A stretch of 64,000 bases of DNA from Scyliorhinus canicula (Eukaryota). Shown piece after piece: positions 12,183 to 25,834 of the stretch (position 1 is its first letter; every line of letters starts with the position of its first letter). The position numbers and the translations under genes are program-made. The DNA is taken from NCBI RefSeq assembly GCF_902713615.1, contig NW_024055444.1:62001-126000 (forward strand). The letters are read 5' to 3'. A model generated the notes under the pieces. It saw only the letters and a program-made list of their open reading frames with translations, was not told the origin of the DNA and searched no databases.

Positions 12183-12253
12183 GGAAATTGACCCGGTCTC
12201 TGTCACTGTGAATATTCCAACCCAGCACAGTATGGCAAGTCAATATAAAATCC
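12183..12253 (-). other. NAR-TCR D segment (coding 12211-12225, CTGGGTTGGAATATT) flanked by two 12-RSS
   Basis: V-facing RSS (plus strand): CACAGTA 12226-12232, 12 nt, ATAAAATCC. J-facing RSS (minus strand): CACAGTG 12204-12210, 12 nt, weak nonamer TCAATTTCC. Fits V-23 / 12-D-12 / 23-J. Confidence 0.8.
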
Positions 12254-12576
12254 CCGGCTATATGGTGAACGTGGGCACATAATTTCAACAGTGGGGACTG
12301 CGGTTCCCAGTTCCCTCTGTTGGAACAGGATCCGGCTGGTCTGAGGGTTCGTCACTGAGATCAGTTATTCCCAATCACTATTCACTGACACTAATTTCTG
12401 GGAAAGTATCAACATCCGCACAAACTCGGCGTTTATAAAACTCAAGATGTTAACGGGAATGATCCAGTCTCATTATAACCCAGAGCATGGGACAGACAGT
12501 GTGAGGCGGAACTGTGGGTGTTTCAGGGCAGATTAACTCCGCTTTTACATTTGTTTATGTGATAATCCGCACTGAG

Positions 12577-12614
12577 GGATTTTGTACCGCGGGAAGACGA
12601 GACCCATCACTGTG
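12577..12614 (-). other. RSS of NAR-TCR V (22-nt spacer)
   Basis: CACAGTG (12608-12614), 22 nt, ACAAAATCC (12577-12585). Confidence 0.85.
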
Positions 12615-13094
12615 TGCTCCTGTATCTGCACTGAGCTTTACAGAAATAGGTGGCGCTGTCTTCAACTCTCACATCCCGAATTTCCAGCGAAAATGTCTTT
12701 TCTGCTTTATTCACCGTCACAACAAATCTCCCTCCGCTGGAGATCCGCTCCCAATCTGCCCCGGGCTGGGTTTGTCTGAAGAAATCCCCGCTTTTCAATT
12801 CAACAGTATAGTATCCACTGTGTAAAACACAGGTGATAGTGAGAGACTGGCACTCCTCCTTGGTCACCGCTCCTGGGCTCTGTGTCACTGACTGACTGAA
12901 ATATCCTGGAAATTAAACAGAGACAGTTTAATGGACCATCACAGCCAGAAACACACATCAGGCTAAAACCCCAGACAGTCTGTAATTGGGATGGAATCGG
13001 GCAGCTTTGTGTTAAATCCACACAATGTGGGTTAGTCTGATCGGTACTCACCGGGTAAACAGACACACAGCGTGAAAACAAGGAGGATCCCCAT
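12615..13094 (-). CDS. IgNAR-like V of NAR-TCR cassette 1, intact; leader exon 13052-13094, V exon 12615-12905
   Basis: Leader MGILLVFTLCVCLP, GTGAGT donor, TTTCCAG acceptor. GYFSQSVTQSPGAVTKEECQSLTITC…FFRQTQPGADWERISSGGRFVVTVNKAEKTFSLEIRDVRVEDSATYFCKAQ shows the VNAR-type short CDR2 region and ISxGGR…TVN motif. Confidence 0.9.
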
Positions 13095-13381
13095 CATTCT
13101 GCTGCCTGGAGCTGATGGTTTAGATGTCGGGGATCGAGAGACTGCAAACCTGGACTGCTCTGGGAGACTGCGCCTCAGACCTGAACTGAAATTAAATTTC
13201 GCCCTTAAATCGGTAAATTAGGCCACGCCCCCAGGCTACCTCACAACAGAAATTGAGTTTTGAAGCGGTACAGCCGGTTGCAAACACTCAGTCGAACATC
13301 CACAGCTCTTGCTACCAGGGAGCCTCCAGTTGCCTGTCGCTTCATTGGATTTGTGAGCTGGGGTTCAAACGTAGCTCAAAC

Positions 13382-19900: not shown

Positions 19901-21418
19901 TTGCCTTTGATTTTGACTTTAAATTGTGTCTCCCCTAGACAGGTCGTCTCCAATTTTCTTTTAATTGACTTGATGTTCGTAGAATTTTACACTTTAGAAT
20001 TGACACCAAATTCGACTGAGCATCTTCCACCCTTTCCAGCTGTTTACTAAGAGTTTATTTCAATTAAGGTGTGAGACTTTGCTTTTAGCCGTATGCTAAA
20101 ATTTAACTTGGCTATGACTTGAAAGACCTGCCTGTTTTAAACATTCGTCAATTGAAACTCTCATCCATGCCTTTCCAGATACTTCCTGAGATAGTTACAT
20201 TCCATGAAGGTGTTGTGGAAGTGGATTACATTTATTGTCTTGTTTTAACATTGCTGTCTGTACGTAATATTAAGGTTCTGAAATATATCTGTGATCATCA
20301 AGTAAAAGGATGTTAAAGGGTTGAGGGAATGGAATGAGAACAGATCTCTGTATCTGATAGTGCAGAGACAGCAAAGATGAGTGTGTAAAACGTTGTCAAC
20401 TGAGACAATGGGCATTGGAATGTGAAAGAGCTGACTCAGGAGCATGAGAAGGAAGGAGATAAGGAAGTTGGACCTGATGGACGGATAGGATAAGAAAACC
20501 GTTAGCAGCAGCAGTATTAGTGAACCGTGCTAATGATTATGTCATAGTAACCACCCTACCTCGAGGATAATAGTTCCATATAAGTACATGTTCTGGATCC
20601 TTGCCAAATCATTGGTGTATCTAGGAATTTAAGGGGACCACCTCTAAGCTGTGATTGTATAAAGGGACAGTCCGCACTTCTCGAAGGTGGTTCCCCGACT
20701 ACTTAGAGATTTGTCCCGGCCGTGAATAAACGAATATTCGTTACCAACGTGTTCGAGTGTTTTACTTCTGGACTGACGAACGGCTATGTGAAAGCGCAAT
20801 TCACAGTGTGAGCCATTGTTTTAGCTTACCACATGAAACCTGTGTGTTTGATAAGCCTGCTTGTGAGCAAGGATCTGCATTTTACAATCCTGCTCTTTGC
20901 AGCTGCTATTAACCTTTTGTGGGATCTTTCCCTGTACCCTCTCAGACCAGATATTGCCAGACTTCCATGTTTCAAATGACACATTTTTCTGTATTTTCAA
21001 GAACACCACCCTCAAAACATGCCGCTTACTAAACACATAAATGCGGCAGATTATTACTGTGGGGCAATGAGGGAGGCAGGCTTTATCAACAGAAACAACT
21101 GAAAATCCCTCACCAACCCGGTAGGCCACTGAGCAACACACAAATGAGCTGACTTCACGTCAGGCTTACAGACTCGGCGGAACAACACGAGACCGCAGGT
21201 TCCTTTACAAGCCTGTCACTTATTCACAGAACGCACACTCAGAGAGACACAGGTCACCTTGTGACCCATCGGGAATACGCGGCACACCGTCATTTGCAAA
21301 CCAGCACTGTCCCCTAAAGTATTTCAGTCCCGCTCTGAGGCCCACTCTCCCAGAGCAGTCCGAGTCTGCAATGTCCATCTCCCCGTCAAATAGAGCATCA
21401 GCTCCAAGCAGCAGAACG

Positions 21419-21911
21419 ATGGAAATCCTCCTTCTTTTCATCCTGTGTGGCGTATTACCCCGTCAGTACGATAAGACTATCCCATGTTCTGTGGATTTAA
21501 TATAAAGCTGCCCGAGTCCATCCCAATTACAGACACTGTTTCGGGATTCAGCCCCATTGTGGTTGGGCTCTGATGGTCCATTAAACTGTCTCTGTTTAAT
21601 TTCCAGTATGTTTGAATCAGTCAGTGACACAGAGCCCGGCAGCGGTTAACAGGGAGGACTGTCAGTCTCTCACCATAAACTGTATTTTCAGTGCTGGTTA
21701 TAGGGCTTTTTTCAAATATGAGAATTTCTTTCGACAATTTCTGACCGGGACAAGTTGGACGCCGATATAGAGTGGAGGGAGATTTGTTGTCAGGACTCAA
21801 GAAGCAAGGCAGTCATTTTCGCTGGAAATTCTGGATATGAGAGTTGAAGATAGCGCCACCTACTACTGTGAACCTCATCAGGGGTGCTACACACATGTTG
21901 GATGGAACAGT
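21419..21911 (+). pseudogene. IgNAR-like V of cassette 2 with a premature stop, abutting a D-like segment; leader 21419-21461, V exon from 21607
   Basis: Leader MEILLLFILCGVLP, GTCAGT donor. QSVTQSPAAVNREDCQSLTINC…NFFRQ…PI*(TAG 21768-21770)SGGRFVV…EDSATYYCEPHQGCYTHVGWNS. Clear paralogue of 12615-13094. Confidence 0.88.
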
Positions 21912-21939
21912 CACCGTGGAAAGGCCCTGAGCAATACCT
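21912..21939 (+). other. D-type 3' 12-RSS directly after the cassette-2 V(D)
   Basis: CACCGTG, 12 nt, GCAATACCT; similar to the J-facing RSS of the cassette-1 D. Confidence 0.65.
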
Positions 21940-22290
21940 CCACAATTGGAATATATTTTCAAGGGCACGGATAGTGAATTATGCGGTTGGTTTAATATCA
22001 TTTTATTCCAGGGTGATTTATTGTATTTTCGCCACTCAGTTGCTTTCTTTGACACTGGATGACAACAATTTTTTATAATGCCAGTTCTGCTTGTCCTCAG
22101 TTGATATGAAGATCACATCTCCGGGCAATGTTCTTCGGGCGATGTTATAAGGGCCCAAGGCCTCACAGAGAATCCTTTGAACCGACAGGTAGCTTGTAAT
22201 ATTGAATATTGTTTATTTATCTAAAACTCCTGAATAATTTTACAATTCAAACTGTCCGTTGATGATTTTCCGACAGGTTGATGTAAAGGC

Positions 22291-22388
22291 GGTTCTTGTA
22301 CTGGTGAGATTGAGAGCCGTGTCACTGTGATACATTTTGAAAGATTGTGATGCAGATGAATCCGGGACGGTTGTGACGGTCACTGCCG
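22291..22388 (+). other. NAR-TCR J of cassette 2 (coding 22330-22388) with 23-RSS
   Basis: GGTTCTTGT (22291-22299), 23 nt, CACTGTG (22323-22329); YILKDCDADESGTVVTVTA-G, then GTAAGT. Confidence 0.88.
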
Positions 22389-22814
22389 GTAAGTGACTCC
22401 AAACCGCACCGTATTACAGACTATACGGGTTGGATGTGGAGAACTAATGGTAATGTAACTGGATCATTAATCCAGAAACCATGCCAATACTCCGGTAACA
22501 TGGGTTCAGATTTCAGCACAACAACGTGTGGAATTTAAATTCCATAAATAAAACAACTGGAAGTAAAAGCTAGTCTTGGTATGGTGATCGTGCAACCATT
22601 GTTGAGGATTTTTAGAGGAATGAGAGTGGATCTCATTAGAAAATAAAACATGTTTATGCGGCTTAATGGGACAGATTCTGGGTTGCTTCTTCCTCAGGCT
22701 GTGAAGTACAACTCGGTGTCAGTTTGAGAATACAGGTTCAAATATTATAACTGAAAAGAGGAGAAATTTCTTCAGTCAAATTCATTGTTGTGAATTTCTG
22801 AATTCCATATCTCA

Positions 22815-23790
22815 GAGAGCGGTGAACCAGGATGTTTCCTTGTCTGGAGGGCGTTAGCTATGTGAAGAGGCTGAACAGACTCGGACTGTTTTCGTTAGAA
22901 ACACGTACGCCGAGGGGGGGGGGGGGGGAGGGGGTCCTGATAGAGGTCCACAAGATTATTAGGGGCATGGGCAGAGAAAGGGCAGATGGATTTTAGTCCG
23001 GACAACTGTGAGGTAATGCATTTTGCTGGGTTGAACACAGAGGGGAAATATACCGTAAATGGAAAGACTCTTGGGAATATAGAAAGTCAGAGAGATCTGG
23101 GCGTGCATGTCCACAGATCTTTGAAGGTGGCAACAAAAGTGGACAAGGTAGTCAAGAAAGTATACAGAATGCTTGCCTTCATTGGACGGGGCATCGGGTA
23201 TAAAACCTGGCAAGTCATGCTACAGCTATATAGAATCTTAGTAAGGCTGCACTTGGAATATTGCGCACAACTTTGTTCACCACAATACCAGAAGGAGGTG
23301 GAGGCTTTGGATTGGGTGCAGAGAAGATTAACCAGGATGTTGCCTGGTCTGGAGGGTGTTAGCTCTGTGGCGAGGCTGAATAGACTCGGACTGTATTCAT
23401 TAGAAAGACATGCCGAGGGGTGTCCTGATAAAGATCTACAAGATTATGAGGGGTATGGATAGACTGGATGGGCAGGCACTCTTTCCCAGGGTGGAGGGGT
23501 CAGTCACTAGGGGGCATAGGTTTAAGGTCTCTGGGGCAAAGTTTAGAGGATATGTGCGAGGCAGGTTTTTTACGCAGAGGGTGGTGAGTGCCTGGAAAGC
23601 GTTGCCAGGGGAGGTTGTGGAAGCAGATACATTAACGGCGTTCAAAAGGCATCTTGAGAAATACATGGATAGGATGGGTATAGAGGGACACGGCACAAGG
23701 AAGTGCTGAGGGTTCTGGCAAAGGATGGTATCGTGACCGGTACAGGCTTGGAGGGCCGAAGGGCCTGTTCCTGTTCTGTACTGTTCATTA
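22815..23790 (+). mobile_element. CR1 LINE 3' fragments in the cassette-2 intron
   Basis: ORFs 22986-23462 and 23410-23709 (MLQLYRILVRLHLEYCAQ…; GHRFKV…FFTQRVVSAWKALP). Confidence 0.9.
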
Positions 23791-23906
23791 TTCTTTGTTC
23801 TTTGCCTGAAGAATACTCACAACATAAACCAGTTGGAGTGAAAGGCCTCTCTCTGTTCTGCTGATTTCGCGTAATGTAAAAGTTAGGGGGAAAATGCCCA
23901 GGAGAG

Positions 23907-24272
23907 GGGCAGCAGGGTAGCATGGTGGTTAGCATAAATGCTTCACAGCTCTAGGGACCCAGGTTCGATTCCCGGATGGATCACTGTCTGTGTGGAGTCT
24001 GCACGTCCTCCCCCTGTGTGCGTGGGTTTCCTCCGGGTGCTCCGGTTTCCTCCCACAGTCCAAAGATGTGCGGGTTAGGTGGATTGGCCATGCTAAATTG
24101 CCCGTAGTGTCCTAATAAAAAAGTAAGGTTAAAGGGGGGGTTGTTGGGTTACGGGTATAGGGTGGATACGTGGGTTGAGTAGGGTGATCATGGCTCGGCA
24201 CAACATTGAGGGCCGAAGGACCTGTTCTGTGCTGTGCTGTACTGTTCTATGTTCTATGTTCTATGTTCTATG
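23907..24272 (+). mobile_element. HE1/V-SINE-like copy
   Basis: Near-identical to 811-1140, with (TGTTCTA)n tail. Confidence 0.85.
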
Positions 24273-25184
24273 AGAGAATCAGTTCATGGCAGAAAGATTT
24301 GAAATTGTCAGAGTTCTGGAAGTGGCAGCTGCCAGTGAGTAACGGTAAAAACAACTGCGGAAACTGAACAGACTGAACACAACCGACAACTGAGAAACTT
24401 TGGGACAAGTTTGCATGATCACGGAAAAAGGCAACAAGTACAAAGTAAATGTCGAAATAAAATTAAACTAACTGGAAATATTTCAGATTGAAGTGAAACA
24501 TAGAAAAATGATACTAATGGAAGAAAACAGACAGACCGACAAATAGATGGAAAAGCAGATCAAAACTTCTGAGAGATGTTGAACTGCAATAAATTTGTGG
24601 TCATCAAAGTTTAAATCAGGTTTGGCCCAATTGGTGCTGATGAATCGCATTAATTTCCTGCTGGATTTTGCTGTACGAATTGATGCAATACTTCCTATCA
24701 GACAACCGTTTTTGGAAACAGATTGCCTGTGAAAATAACATTTTCCCTCGGTTTGTCTCTATCCAAGGAAACTAAAAACTGAAATGTAATATGCATCATA
24801 GAATCGAGTGCGGCAGGATTACATTCGGCCCTTTGCGTAGATGCTTATCCTCTTTCAATCCAATCAAATTGTTCCAACCAATCCAAATTTTCAACGTTGC
24901 GCTGCATTTTTTACAGGTCCAGCACAGGTCGATTTTCAATTTTGAAAGTTACGACTAAATGTGATCCCAACACGCTGTCTGACATTGCATTCCAGATCGG
25001 AAGAAATTGTGTGTAAAATAAAATATGACTTATTAACCATTTGAACATATTTTATATTTCAAAAAAGTATAAACTGTTCGAACCGGCTGCAAATTCAGAC
25101 AAAGACACCAGTGGGGATGCACTTCACAAACACCCGGGAACCAGCGGATATATGAACAAATAATGTTCAATTTTTATCCGCCAG

Positions 25185-25484
25185 ATTCCAGTTCCTTGGT
25201 GTCCAAGAATCCGCCTTTCCAAACCTCTGCTGCCGGTGACACAGTTACATGAAACTGGGAATATTCAGGGTTCTGTCAGTACACAGTACACTGGGATCAT
25301 CAGTCCCCAGGACAGGCTCTGGAATACCTGCTTCAGAGTCACACTTCAGGAGACGAACATACCGCTGCCGGAGAAAGAATCTCTGCTTCCATCTACACTG
25401 CCAAGAAAATCAGCCGGTTAAAGATCTCTGAACTGCAACTGAGCGACTCCGCTGTGTATTACGCTGCACTGAGCCGGAACACAG
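25185..25484 (+). pseudogene. Supporting TCR-delta V of cassette 2, with a stop
   Basis: Acceptor TTTTTATCCGCCAG; DSSSLVSKNPP…VT*(TGA 25250-25252)NWEYSGFCQYTVHW…SDSAVYYAALSR; paralogue of 7754-8058. Confidence 0.88.
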
Positions 25485-25834
25485 CACAGCGATGCAGAGC
25501 ACGGAGAGAGCTGGGCAAAAACCTGAACATGGCGAGGGTTACACACACACAGTGATATAGAGCACGGAGAGAGCTGTACAGAAACCTGACCATGGTGAGG
25601 ATTACACACACACGCAGTGATACAGAGCACGGAGAGAGCTGTACAGAAACCTGAACATGGTGAGGATTACACACACAGTGATACAGAGCACGGATAGAGC
25701 TGTACAGAAACCTGACCATGGTGAGGATCACACACACAGTGATATAGAGCACGGAGAGAGCTGTACAGGCACCTGAACATGGTAAGGATTACACACACAA
25801 TGACATAGAGCACGGAGGGAGCCACGGAAAGCCC
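25485..25834 (+). repeat. Second tandem 23-RSS array (6 units, more degenerate)
   Basis: Heptamers at 25485 (CACAGCG), 25548, 25613 (CGCAGTG), 25674, 25735, 25796 (CACAATG). Nonamers GCAAAAACC, ACAGAAACC x3, ACAGGCACC, then degenerate. Spacers 23 nt. Confidence 0.93.

What the first reader, a model, noticed from the sequence alone, without database searches (positions are those of the whole stretch)
21867..21939. Candidate germline-joined V-D in cassette 2
Seen: in cassette 1, V and D are ~390 bp apart with a V-RSS and a D 5' RSS between them. In cassette 2 the V end runs through 5 nt (CACAT) into GTTGGATGGAACAGT, which matches the cassette-1 D at 10/15 nt and reads VGWNS versus LGWNI in frame, and then into the D 3' 12-RSS. 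No V nonamer or D 5' RSS is visible, while D-J spacing is similar (~405 vs ~366 bp). Established: germline-joined segments occur in shark Ig clusters and are attributed to RAG activity in germ cells. Inference: a fossil RAG-type join in a TCR-associated cassette. Caveat: CACAT(GT) could be a heptamer remnant of an ordinary deletion.
Basis: partly seen in the sequence, partly recalled or inferred. Interest (0 to 1): 0.72.

Follow-up and report, generated by a model that had tools for sequence, protein, structure and literature searches.

The report
Inherited V-D join in shark NAR-TCR pseudogene
In a dead copy of a catshark T-cell-receptor gene cassette, two pieces that immune cells normally cut and paste (V and D) are already fused in inherited DNA, at the points where the V(D)J recombinase cuts; this kind of fusion is well known in shark antibody genes, but I found no report of it for a shark T-cell receptor.

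Summary
Cassette 2 (plus strand) runs from an IgNAR-like V straight into a D-like stretch of 16-18 nt. Next come a 12-spacer recombination signal (RSS, the DNA signal the recombinase cuts) at 21912-21939, a 418-bp D-J interval and a J with a 23-RSS.

The roughly 370-390 bp block that four unjoined cassettes carry (V 23-RSS, spacer DNA, D 5' 12-RSS) is missing without trace.

- **V side:** the nearest unjoined relative, bamboo shark L004, ends its V at ...TACTACACA|CACAGTG. Cassette 2 keeps ...TACACA to the last base.
- **D side:** the D-like stretch shares CAT and TGGAACA with L004's D.
- **Junction:** at most 0-3 nt are unassigned, and they sit in a CATG/ACATGT palindrome.

That is the signature of a RAG coding joint, not of a random deletion.

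Contigs from two samples in two studies span the junction at the same depth as the flanks, and one carries a nearby SNP. The join is therefore inherited, not somatic and not an assembly error.

The cassette is dead: TAG in the NAR V, TGA in the supporting V, and a decayed RSS.

An intact cassette with the same architecture exists in another shark (L003). The scan's first-stage notes flag more V-D join candidates in this genome. Whether the joins share one origin is unresolved.

This is a new member of a known kind, of moderate interest.

The parts
21419..21461 (+). Cassette 2 leader exon (ATG 21419; splice donor GT at 21462)
   Evidence: It aligns with the cassette 1 and L003 leaders. The leader intron is kept, so this is not a retrocopy.
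21607..21893 (+). Cassette 2 IgNAR-like (NAR-TcR) V exon. It carries an in-frame TAG at 21768-21770. The coding end ...TACACA is intact to its last base.
   Evidence: The stop is also present in contigs of two samples.
21894..21895 (+). Junctional CA. It could be the first bases of the D (L004's D starts TCAT), a 2-nt P addition palindromic with the TG that follows, or the last trace of the V heptamer.
   Evidence: Direct reading against L004, L001 and L002. The three readings cannot be told apart.
21896..21911 (+). D-like coding stretch TGTTGGATGGAACAGT (16 nt; 18 nt if CA belongs to it). It contains a TGGA tandem duplication.
   Evidence: 10/15 match to the cassette 1 D. It shares the TGGAACA core with L004's D, TCATTTTGGAACAAAC. 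D segments are 15-16 nt in four unjoined cassettes, and two of them start with TG.
21912..21939 (+). D 3' 12-RSS, slightly decayed: heptamer CACCGTG, spacer of 11 or 12 nt, nonamer AGCAATACC or GCAATACCT
   Evidence: It is homologous in position and sequence to the D 3' RSS of C1, L001, L003 and L004.
21940..22290 (+). D-J intervening DNA. It aligns over its whole length with that of unjoined cassettes and carries one 35-bp insertion.
22291..22329 (+). J 23-RSS (nonamer GGTTCTTGT, 23-nt spacer, heptamer CACTGTG)
22330..22388 (+). J segment, open reading frame (YILKDCDADESGTVVTVTA), followed by the GTAAGT donor
25184..25489 (+). Leaderless supporting TCR-delta V of cassette 2. It has an in-frame TGA at 25250-25252 and WYRQ changed to WDHQ.
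11774..13097 (-). Cassette 1 NAR part (leader, V, 23-RSS, 12-RSS-D-12-RSS, 23-RSS-J), used as the unjoined comparator. Its V-D block of 389 bp (12614-12226) has no counterpart in cassette 2.

Best explanation
Cassette 2 is a dead NAR-TcR cassette of the small-spotted catshark TCR alpha/delta V region. The species comes from earlier scan notes. It fits the closest named protein hits, which are S. canicula models.

In an ancestor's germ line, the V and D segments were fused by a RAG-type coding joint. The V 23-RSS and the D 5' 12-RSS were cleaved, the roughly 380-bp signal-ended block was lost, and the two coding ends were ligated with essentially no trimming and at most 2-3 added or ambiguous bases.

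What remained is a VD exon that ends in the D 3' 12-RSS. That RSS faces the J 23-RSS about 350 bp away, so a single 12/23-legal VD-to-J rearrangement would have completed the NAR V domain.

The copy has since decayed: one stop in the NAR V, one stop in the supporting V, and a weakened RSS. It now does nothing.

Shown: the anatomy, the exact position of the left breakpoint, presence in inherited DNA, and the disabling mutations.
Inferred: that RAG made the join, that it happened in germ cells, and the order of joining and decay.
For: 1. The missing segment is the whole RSS-to-RSS block.
- That block is 389, 380, 381 and 368 bp in the four unjoined cassettes C1, L001, L002 and L004.
- No trace of it is left in cassette 2.
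- Everything from the D 3' RSS to the J aligns with the unjoined cassettes.

2. The left breakpoint is at the coding end.
- L004, which groups with cassette 2 at 96/98 support together with P0050, ends its V at TACTACACA followed by CACAGTG.
- Cassette 2 reads ...TGCTACACA, then CA, then TG....

3. The right side keeps a D of normal length (16-18 nt against 15-16 nt). It shares CAT and TGGAACA with L004's D. The bamboo-shark D segments of L001 and L002 start with TG.

4. The junction lies in a CATG/ACATGT palindrome, as expected if a hairpin was opened at an untrimmed end (direct reading).

5. The leader intron and the D-J interval are retained, so the structure is not derived from a cDNA.

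6. The join is inherited.
- Contig X1 record 2 covers 21720-22129 with 0 differences at depth 5.7; its flanks are at 5.5-6.1.
- Contig X3 record 10 covers 21840-22129 at depth 6.9 and carries G>A at 21886; its flanks are at 5.6-6.6.
- The two contigs come from two samples in two studies.

7. The same architecture occurs in an intact cassette, L003...TACTACACA|CATGGGACAC|CACAATG-12-ACAAATACC, then about 350 bp, then 23-RSS-J. A Mustelus asterias model, P0037, carries the same tail, WYYAHGTPQ.

8. Background: germline joins in cartilaginous-fish Ig clusters are attributed to RAG expression in germ cells (PMC4279169).
Against: - The D-side coding end cannot be fixed to the base, because no unjoined orthologue of this particular cassette was available.
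- CA could be the first two bases of the V heptamer, and TG the last two of the D 5' heptamer. That would not be a clean RAG cut.
- The tissues of the two read sets are unknown.
- The link to L004 rests on an 85-column protein tree in which cassette 2 has a very long branch.
- Nothing shows RAG activity directly.
Confidence: 0.8

Rival explanations
1. An ordinary deletion, not made by RAG (replication slippage or repair of a break), removed about 380 bp between V and D in a cassette that was already decaying. It happened to end near the two heptamer borders, leaving CA from the V heptamer and TG from the D 5' heptamer.
For: CA|TG can be read as the outer two bases of CACAGTG and of CACTGTG. 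The cassette is a pseudogene, so any deletion would be tolerated.
Against: - Both breakpoints would have to fall within 0-2 nt of the two RAG cleavage sites.
- Take only deletions that remove both RSSs, spare the Cys codon and leave a recognisable D. My rough count is then about (2/25)x(2/7), or roughly 2% (my estimate, not a tool result).
- A second cassette, L003, shows the same exactness, with the full V end TACTACACA.
- There is no microhomology at the junction that would explain slippage.
Confidence: 0.1
2. The join did not happen at this locus. Cassette 2 descends from, or was converted by, an older VD-joined NAR-TcR lineage that is shared with L003 and the Mustelus gene. On this reading there was one ancient RAG event rather than several.
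For: - Cassette 2, L003 and P0037 share the motif (T/G)CA-CA-TG at the junction. Cassette 2 and L003 also share GAA after the Cys codon.
- AU tests do not clearly reject cassette 2 plus L003 as one clade (p = 0.053), nor L003 plus P0037/P0035 (p = 0.24).
Against: - The free tree puts the three in three different V clades, with cassette 2 beside unjoined L004/P0050.
- D-J interval identity between cassette 2 and L003 (55%) is no higher than with unjoined cassettes, which range from 51 to 61%.
- The D parts differ in length (16-18 nt against 8-10 nt).
Confidence: 0.3
3. The join is a somatic V-to-D rearrangement from lymphocyte DNA, or an assembly error, and is not inherited.
For: None found. 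I considered it only because the tissue of origin is unknown.
Against: - The junction-spanning contigs have the same depth as single-copy flanks in two samples from two studies, and they differ by a nearby SNP.
- A clonal somatic joint would be a tiny fraction of reads and would not recur in two animals.
- The V also carries a stop codon in both samples.
Confidence: 0.02

Closest known systems
Partly germline-joined (VD-J) IgM heavy-chain clusters of sharks and skates
   Same: V and D are fused in inherited DNA with both intervening RSSs lost. The D 3' RSS and J RSS are left for one further rearrangement. Unjoined sister clusters exist in the same genome. The joins are attributed to RAG activity in germ cells (PMC4279169, and references to Lee et al. 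2000 cited in PMC7615758).
   Different: This case lies in a NAR-TcR cassette inside the TCR alpha/delta V region, not in an Ig cluster. The cassette feeds a TCR delta chain through a supporting V. This copy is a pseudogene.
Marsupial TCR-mu V-mu-j (germline-joined V of a three-domain TCR)
   Same: Both are germline-joined V elements in a TCR with two V domains. NAR-TcR is regarded as the shark analogue of TCR-mu (PMC7615758).
   Different: - V-mu-j is fully joined, intronless and thought to be a retrocopy, and it encodes the membrane-proximal supporting V.
- Here the distal NAR V is only V-D joined, keeps its leader intron and still carries RSSs.
[quoted passage not shown]
Opossum partially germline-joined VH (Wang and Miller 2012, as cited in PMC7615758 and PMC5931798)
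   Same: It is a V already joined to D in the germ line that still recombines with J.
   Different: It is a mammalian IgH locus, and it is functional and transcribed. No expression was seen here.
IgNAR type III clusters with germline-fused D segments
   Same: It is a germline fusion inside the gene family that supplies the NAR V domain.
   Different: There the fusion is D-D in an Ig cluster. Here it is V-D in the TCR-associated NAR V.

Membership tests
NAR-TcR cassette (doubly rearranging TCR delta V unit of cartilaginous fish) | An IgNAR-like V with its own leader, followed by a J with a splice donor, followed by a leaderless supporting TCR-delta V with a splice acceptor | tested here: met
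   The V is 56% identical in protein to the cassette 1 V. The J with GTAAGT lies at 22330-22394. The supporting V lies at 25184-25489 and is 78% identical to the supporting V of S. canicula model P0032.
NAR-TcR cassette (doubly rearranging TCR delta V unit of cartilaginous fish) | Separate V, D and J segments, each with its own RSS (V-23, 12-D-12, 23-J) | tested here: not met
   The V 23-RSS and the D 5' 12-RSS are absent. Cassette 1, L001, L002 and L004 have the full set.
NAR-TcR cassette (doubly rearranging TCR delta V unit of cartilaginous fish) | Open reading frames, so that the cassette is potentially functional | tested here: not met
   TAG at 21768-21770 in the NAR V and TGA at 25250-25252 in the supporting V. 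No RNA run holds the V exon.
Germline-joined antigen-receptor gene segments (RAG-type joins inherited through the germ line) | The join is present in inherited DNA, that is, in all cells and in different individuals | tested here: inconclusive
   Two samples from two studies carry the junction at flank depth, with a SNP nearby. That argues strongly for inheritance. The tissues are unknown, and only two samples span the junction.
Germline-joined antigen-receptor gene segments (RAG-type joins inherited through the germ line) | Both RSSs and the DNA between them are lost, with breakpoints at the coding ends give or take a few bases | tested here: met
   The V end is identical to the coding end of unjoined L004. 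The D is of full length. Only 0-3 nt are ambiguous. The D-side border could not be fixed to the base.
Germline-joined antigen-receptor gene segments (RAG-type joins inherited through the germ line) | Unjoined homologues exist, so the joined state is derived | tested here: met
   C1, L001, L002 and L004 are unjoined. Cassette 2 sits next to unjoined L004/P0050 in the tree.
Germline-joined antigen-receptor gene segments (RAG-type joins inherited through the germ line) | Made by RAG in germ cells | not testable with these tools
   Inferred from the junction anatomy and from the accepted explanation for shark Ig joins (PMC4279169).
Retrotransposed pre-joined V (marsupial V-mu-j type) | Intronless and fully V(D)J joined | tested here: not met
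   The leader intron (21462-21606) and the D-J interval are retained.

The most novel reading that the evidence does not exclude
VD-joined NAR-TcR cassettes may be a recurrent, and in some species still intact and used, class of shark TCR-delta V gene.
- Examples: L003 with open frames and good 12- and 23-RSSs; the Mustelus asterias gene behind P0037; further candidates flagged in this genome by other first-stage notes.
- If so, RAG has acted in the germ line on a TCR locus. Sharks would then hold the first germline-joined TCR V genes outside marsupial TCR-mu, with a half hard-wired CDR3 on the free-standing NAR domain.
- Cassette 2 would be a decayed member of that class.
Probability: 0.4. 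Interest if true: 0.65.

Novelty: new member of a known kind. Interest (0 to 1): 0.5.

Why it matters
Germline joining is a hallmark of cartilaginous-fish antibody genes, and it is taken as evidence that RAG can act in germ cells. A 2023 paper states that marsupial TCR-mu is the only TCR known to have germline-joined V genes (PMC7615758).

A V-D join in a NAR-TcR cassette extends the phenomenon to a shark TCR locus, and to the receptor regarded as the shark analogue of TCR-mu.

This particular copy is a dead fossil, so it has no physiological weight of its own. Its value is as a clean, datable scar. It is also a pointer to intact VD-joined cassettes, such as L003. Their use in the thymus could be tested directly with TCR-delta repertoire data.

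Tried and rejected
- **Gnomon double-V protein models as evidence for joins:** rejected.
  - I fetched part of the 75 hits. In those, the CDR3 regions are read-through of RSS DNA.
  - THSD... is the V heptamer, and LRTASLC or AVSLWW is the J-RSS spacer plus heptamer. The predicted 'introns' run from the GT of CACA|GTG to an AG in the J-RSS spacer.
  - These models therefore do not show germline joins. That includes the four basking-shark models I read (P0009, P0010, P0011, P0013).
  - Only P0037 is informative, because its tail matches L003's contiguous DNA.
- **DNA for large assemblies (Cetorhinus, Mustelus):** I could not read other catshark, S. torazame or Mustelus cassettes.
- **Scan of metagenome contigs for more V relatives:** nothing found.
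- **Species of L003, L005 and L006:** not determined. L005's V is 91% identical to a basking-shark model over 86 aa.
- **Single versus multiple origin of the joins:** the AU tests are inconclusive.
- **Expression:**
  - An oligo-dT RNA run laid no reads on 21200-22750.
  - No run on record as RNA holds the V exon.
  - The one holder, X9, is only guessed to be RNA. Its contigs span the leader intron, so they are DNA or unspliced.
  - This is no proof of silence.
- **RAG-transposon insertion as the reverse explanation (joined ancestral, V-D block inserted later):** rejected. There are no target-site duplications between V ends and D starts in C1 or L004 (direct reading). The joined cassettes also sit among unjoined ones in the tree.
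- **A 12-RSS-like hit at 37089:** chance match with no cassette around it.
- **Criscitiello et al. 2006 and Ott et al. 2021:** not held in the library. What they say about germline NAR-TcR organisation could not be checked.

Full report
**What is in the window.** A tblastn search with the finding's V domain found two IgNAR-like V exons in opposite orientation.
- Cassette 1 is on the minus strand (V exon 12905-12615).
- Cassette 2 is on the plus strand (V exon from 21607).
- Each is followed by a J with a splice donor. A few kilobases further on lies a leaderless TCR-delta-type supporting V, at 8059-7754 and 25184-25489.
- These are NAR-TcR cassettes. Earlier notes of the scan and the closest named protein hits (S. 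canicula models such as P0032) point to the small-spotted catshark.

**Cassette 1 is the textbook unjoined form.**
- The V ends at 12615.
- CACAGTG-22/23-ACAAAATCC follows at 12614-12577.
- 389 bp after the V end comes a D 5' 12-RSS ending TACTGTG (12253-12226).
- Then come the D CTGGGTTGGAATATT (12225-12211), a D 3' 12-RSS (12210-12183), a J 23-RSS (11870-11832) and an open J (11831-11774).
- The pattern V-23 / 12-D-12 / 23-J is repeated in three bamboo-shark cassettes fetched through protein hits: L001, L002 and L004.

**Cassette 2.**
- After the Cys codon (21867-21869) the V tail GAACCTCATCAGGGGTGCTACACA ends at 21893.
- Next come CA (21894-21895) and TGTTGGATGGAACAGT (21896-21911).
- Then CACCGTG (21912-21918), a spacer, and GCAATACCT (to 21939).
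- The next recognisable element is the J 23-RSS (22291-22329), followed by an open J (22330-22388, then GTAAGT).
- There is no V nonamer, no 23-nt spacer and no D 5' RSS.
- A sensitive search with cassette 1's 389-bp V-D block found only chance words in the cassette 2 locus.
- By contrast, the stretch from the 12-RSS heptamer to the J heptamer aligns end to end with the D-J intervals of C1, L001, L003 and L004. Those are 377-385 bp. Cassette 2 is 418 bp because of one 35-bp insertion.
- The RSS at 21912 is therefore the D 3' RSS by position as well as by sequence. It is the only site in the window that pairs a CACNGTG heptamer with a 7/9 or better match to the family nonamer ACAAATACC; shuffles give 0.12.
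The 10/15 D match is weak on its own, but positional homology carries the argument.

- In a tree of 48 NAR-type V domains, cassette 2 groups with the unjoined bamboo-shark cassette L004 and an H. ocellatum model whose tail reads through a V heptamer (THSD). Support is 96/98, but cassette 2 has a very long branch.
- Cassette 2 and L004 also share a 263-nt V exon; most others have 266 nt.
- Both have a 24-nt tail after the Cys codon.
- L004's V ends TACTGGTACTACACA and is followed at once by CACAGTG.
- Cassette 2 reads ...GGGTGCTACACA, so the V coding end is intact to its last base.
- On the other side, D segments are 15-16 nt in the four unjoined cassettes.
- L004's D is TCATTTTGGAACAAAC. The D segments of L001 and L002 start with TG: TGGCTGG....
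- Cassette 2's CATGTTGGATGGAACAGT shares CAT and the TGGAACA core with L004's D and contains a TGGA duplication.

The junction can therefore be read in three ways:
- V untrimmed plus a D lacking one base.
- V untrimmed plus a 2-nt P addition (CA, palindromic with TG) plus an untrimmed 16-nt D.
- Least likely, two bases retained from each heptamer.

In every reading, the two breakpoints lie within about 2 nt of the two sites where RAG cuts. I estimate that a random deletion, among those that would look like a V-D fusion at all, does this about 2% of the time. That is my arithmetic, not a tool result.

The leader intron and the D-J interval are retained, which excludes a cDNA-derived copy.

**Inherited or somatic?** Logan contigs of four runs were laid on 21200-25400.

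| Sample (study, year) | Junction contig | Differences | Depth | Flank depth |
|---|---|---|---|---|
| S1 (P1, 2019) | 410 nt, 21720-22129 | none | 5.7 | 5.5 and 6.1 |
| S2 (P2, 2024) | 290 nt, 21840-22129 | G>A at 21886 | 6.9 | 5.6 and 6.6 |

- The SNP in S2 changes TGC to TAC. The tail then reads TACTACACA, as in L004 and L003.
- A junction at full single-copy depth in two samples that differ by a nearby SNP is inherited DNA. It is not a lymphocyte clone and not an assembly error.
- S1 may be the assembly's own animal.
- The tissues are coded and unknown to me, so the strict non-lymphoid test remains open.
- The third sample (X9) does not reach the junction.

**State of the cassette.**
- The NAR V has an in-frame TAG at 21768-21770, where relatives have ...ERISSGGRF. 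It is present in both samples.
- The supporting V has a TGA at 25250-25252, and WYRQ has changed to WDHQ.
- The 12-RSS has a fourth-position heptamer change, and either an 11-nt spacer or a poor nonamer.
- The J is open.
- An oligo-dT RNA run laid no reads on the V-J part, and no run on record as RNA holds the V exon.
- The V exon is only 63-73% identical in DNA to the other V exons. Four of those others (C1, L003, L005, L006) are 84-89% identical to each other. This fits long decay.
- Cassette 2 is a pseudogene, and the join is a fossil.

**A second, intact example.**
- L003 is a 2.3-kb host contig in an ENA metagenome assembly. The shark species is undetermined.
- It has an open leader and V exon, with V end TACTACACA at 548-556.
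- Then come CATGGGACAC (557-566) and CACAATG-12-ACAAATACC (567-594).
- The D-J interval is 385 bp, heptamer to heptamer. A 23-RSS and an open J follow (952-1004, then GTAAGT).
- L003 has no V 23-RSS and no D 5' RSS. It is therefore a VD-J cassette that looks functional.
- A Mustelus asterias RefSeq model (P0037) has the tail WYYAHGTPQ, which matches L003's WYYTHGTPQ. This suggests the same contiguous structure, but I could not read its DNA.
- Two other first-stage notes in this genome report candidate V-D-joined NAR-TcR V segments; I did not check them.
- Whether all these go back to one old join or to several is open. The free tree separates them, and D-J interval identities give no special link between cassette 2 and L003. 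AU tests do not clearly reject a common clade (p = 0.053 and 0.24).

**A caution about annotation.**
- RefSeq double-V models of about 230 aa exist in many sharks, rays and skates.
- They are not evidence for germline joins.
- Their CDR3 regions are translated RSS DNA, and their 'introns' start at the GT inside the V heptamer.

**Comparison with what is known.**
- Partly (VD-J) and fully joined Ig clusters are a classic feature of cartilaginous fish and are attributed to RAG expression in germ cells (PMC4279169).
- NAR-TcR is described as doubly rearranging (PMC5931798, PMC12227049).
- In the literature available to me, I found no report of a germline-joined NAR-TcR segment. The primary NAR-TcR papers were not held.
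- The mechanism is therefore known, and its occurrence in this receptor appears to be unreported.

**Verdict.**
- Observation: confirmed.
- Interpretation: supported at about 0.8.
- Novelty: a new member of a known kind.
- Interest: moderate. This copy is dead, but it points to an intact class of VD-joined TCR-associated V genes that can be tested.

Noticed in passing
L003:1-1010 (ENA ERZ27276711 k141_49059): An apparently intact VD-joined NAR-TcR cassette in a shark host contig from a metagenome assembly. It has an open leader and V, a D-like CATGGGACAC, a good 12-RSS (CACAATG-12-ACAAATACC), a 23-RSS and an open J. The species is not determined.
   Followed up: partly
window 21886: Sample S2 carries G>A here, which changes TGC (Cys) to TAC (Tyr) in the V tail. 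The tail then reads TACTACACA, as in L004 and L003. This shows that the junction sits on at least two haplotypes.
   Followed up: partly
window 7296-8086 versus 25155-25822, and 12632-13192 versus 21321-21877: The two cassettes are inverted copies, head to head, with leaders about 8.3 kb apart. Their supporting V plus RSS array are 88-90% identical, but their NAR V parts are only 78% identical and the J region 72%. The cause could be uneven homogenisation or uneven decay.
   Followed up: no
window 22750-24300: The intron between the J and the supporting V of cassette 2 holds very high-copy repeats. Contig word depth reaches the millions in the DNA runs, and there are many reads in an RNA run.
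   Followed up: no
Proteins P0009-P0083 (RefSeq models of Cetorhinus, Carcharodon, Mustelus, Scyliorhinus, Hemiscyllium, Pristis, Amblyraja and others): Automatic double-V gene models of NAR-TcR cassettes use the GT inside the V heptamer as a splice donor. They translate the J-RSS spacer and heptamer (LRTASLC, AVSLWW) or the V-RSS (THSD...) as CDR3. Their names (DSCAM-like, Ig gamma-1-like, lachesin-like) are misleading.
   Followed up: partly
window 25250-25252 and about 25292-25303: The supporting V of cassette 2 has an in-frame TGA, and the conserved WYRQ has changed to WDHQ. The whole cassette is dead, not only the NAR V.
   Followed up: yes
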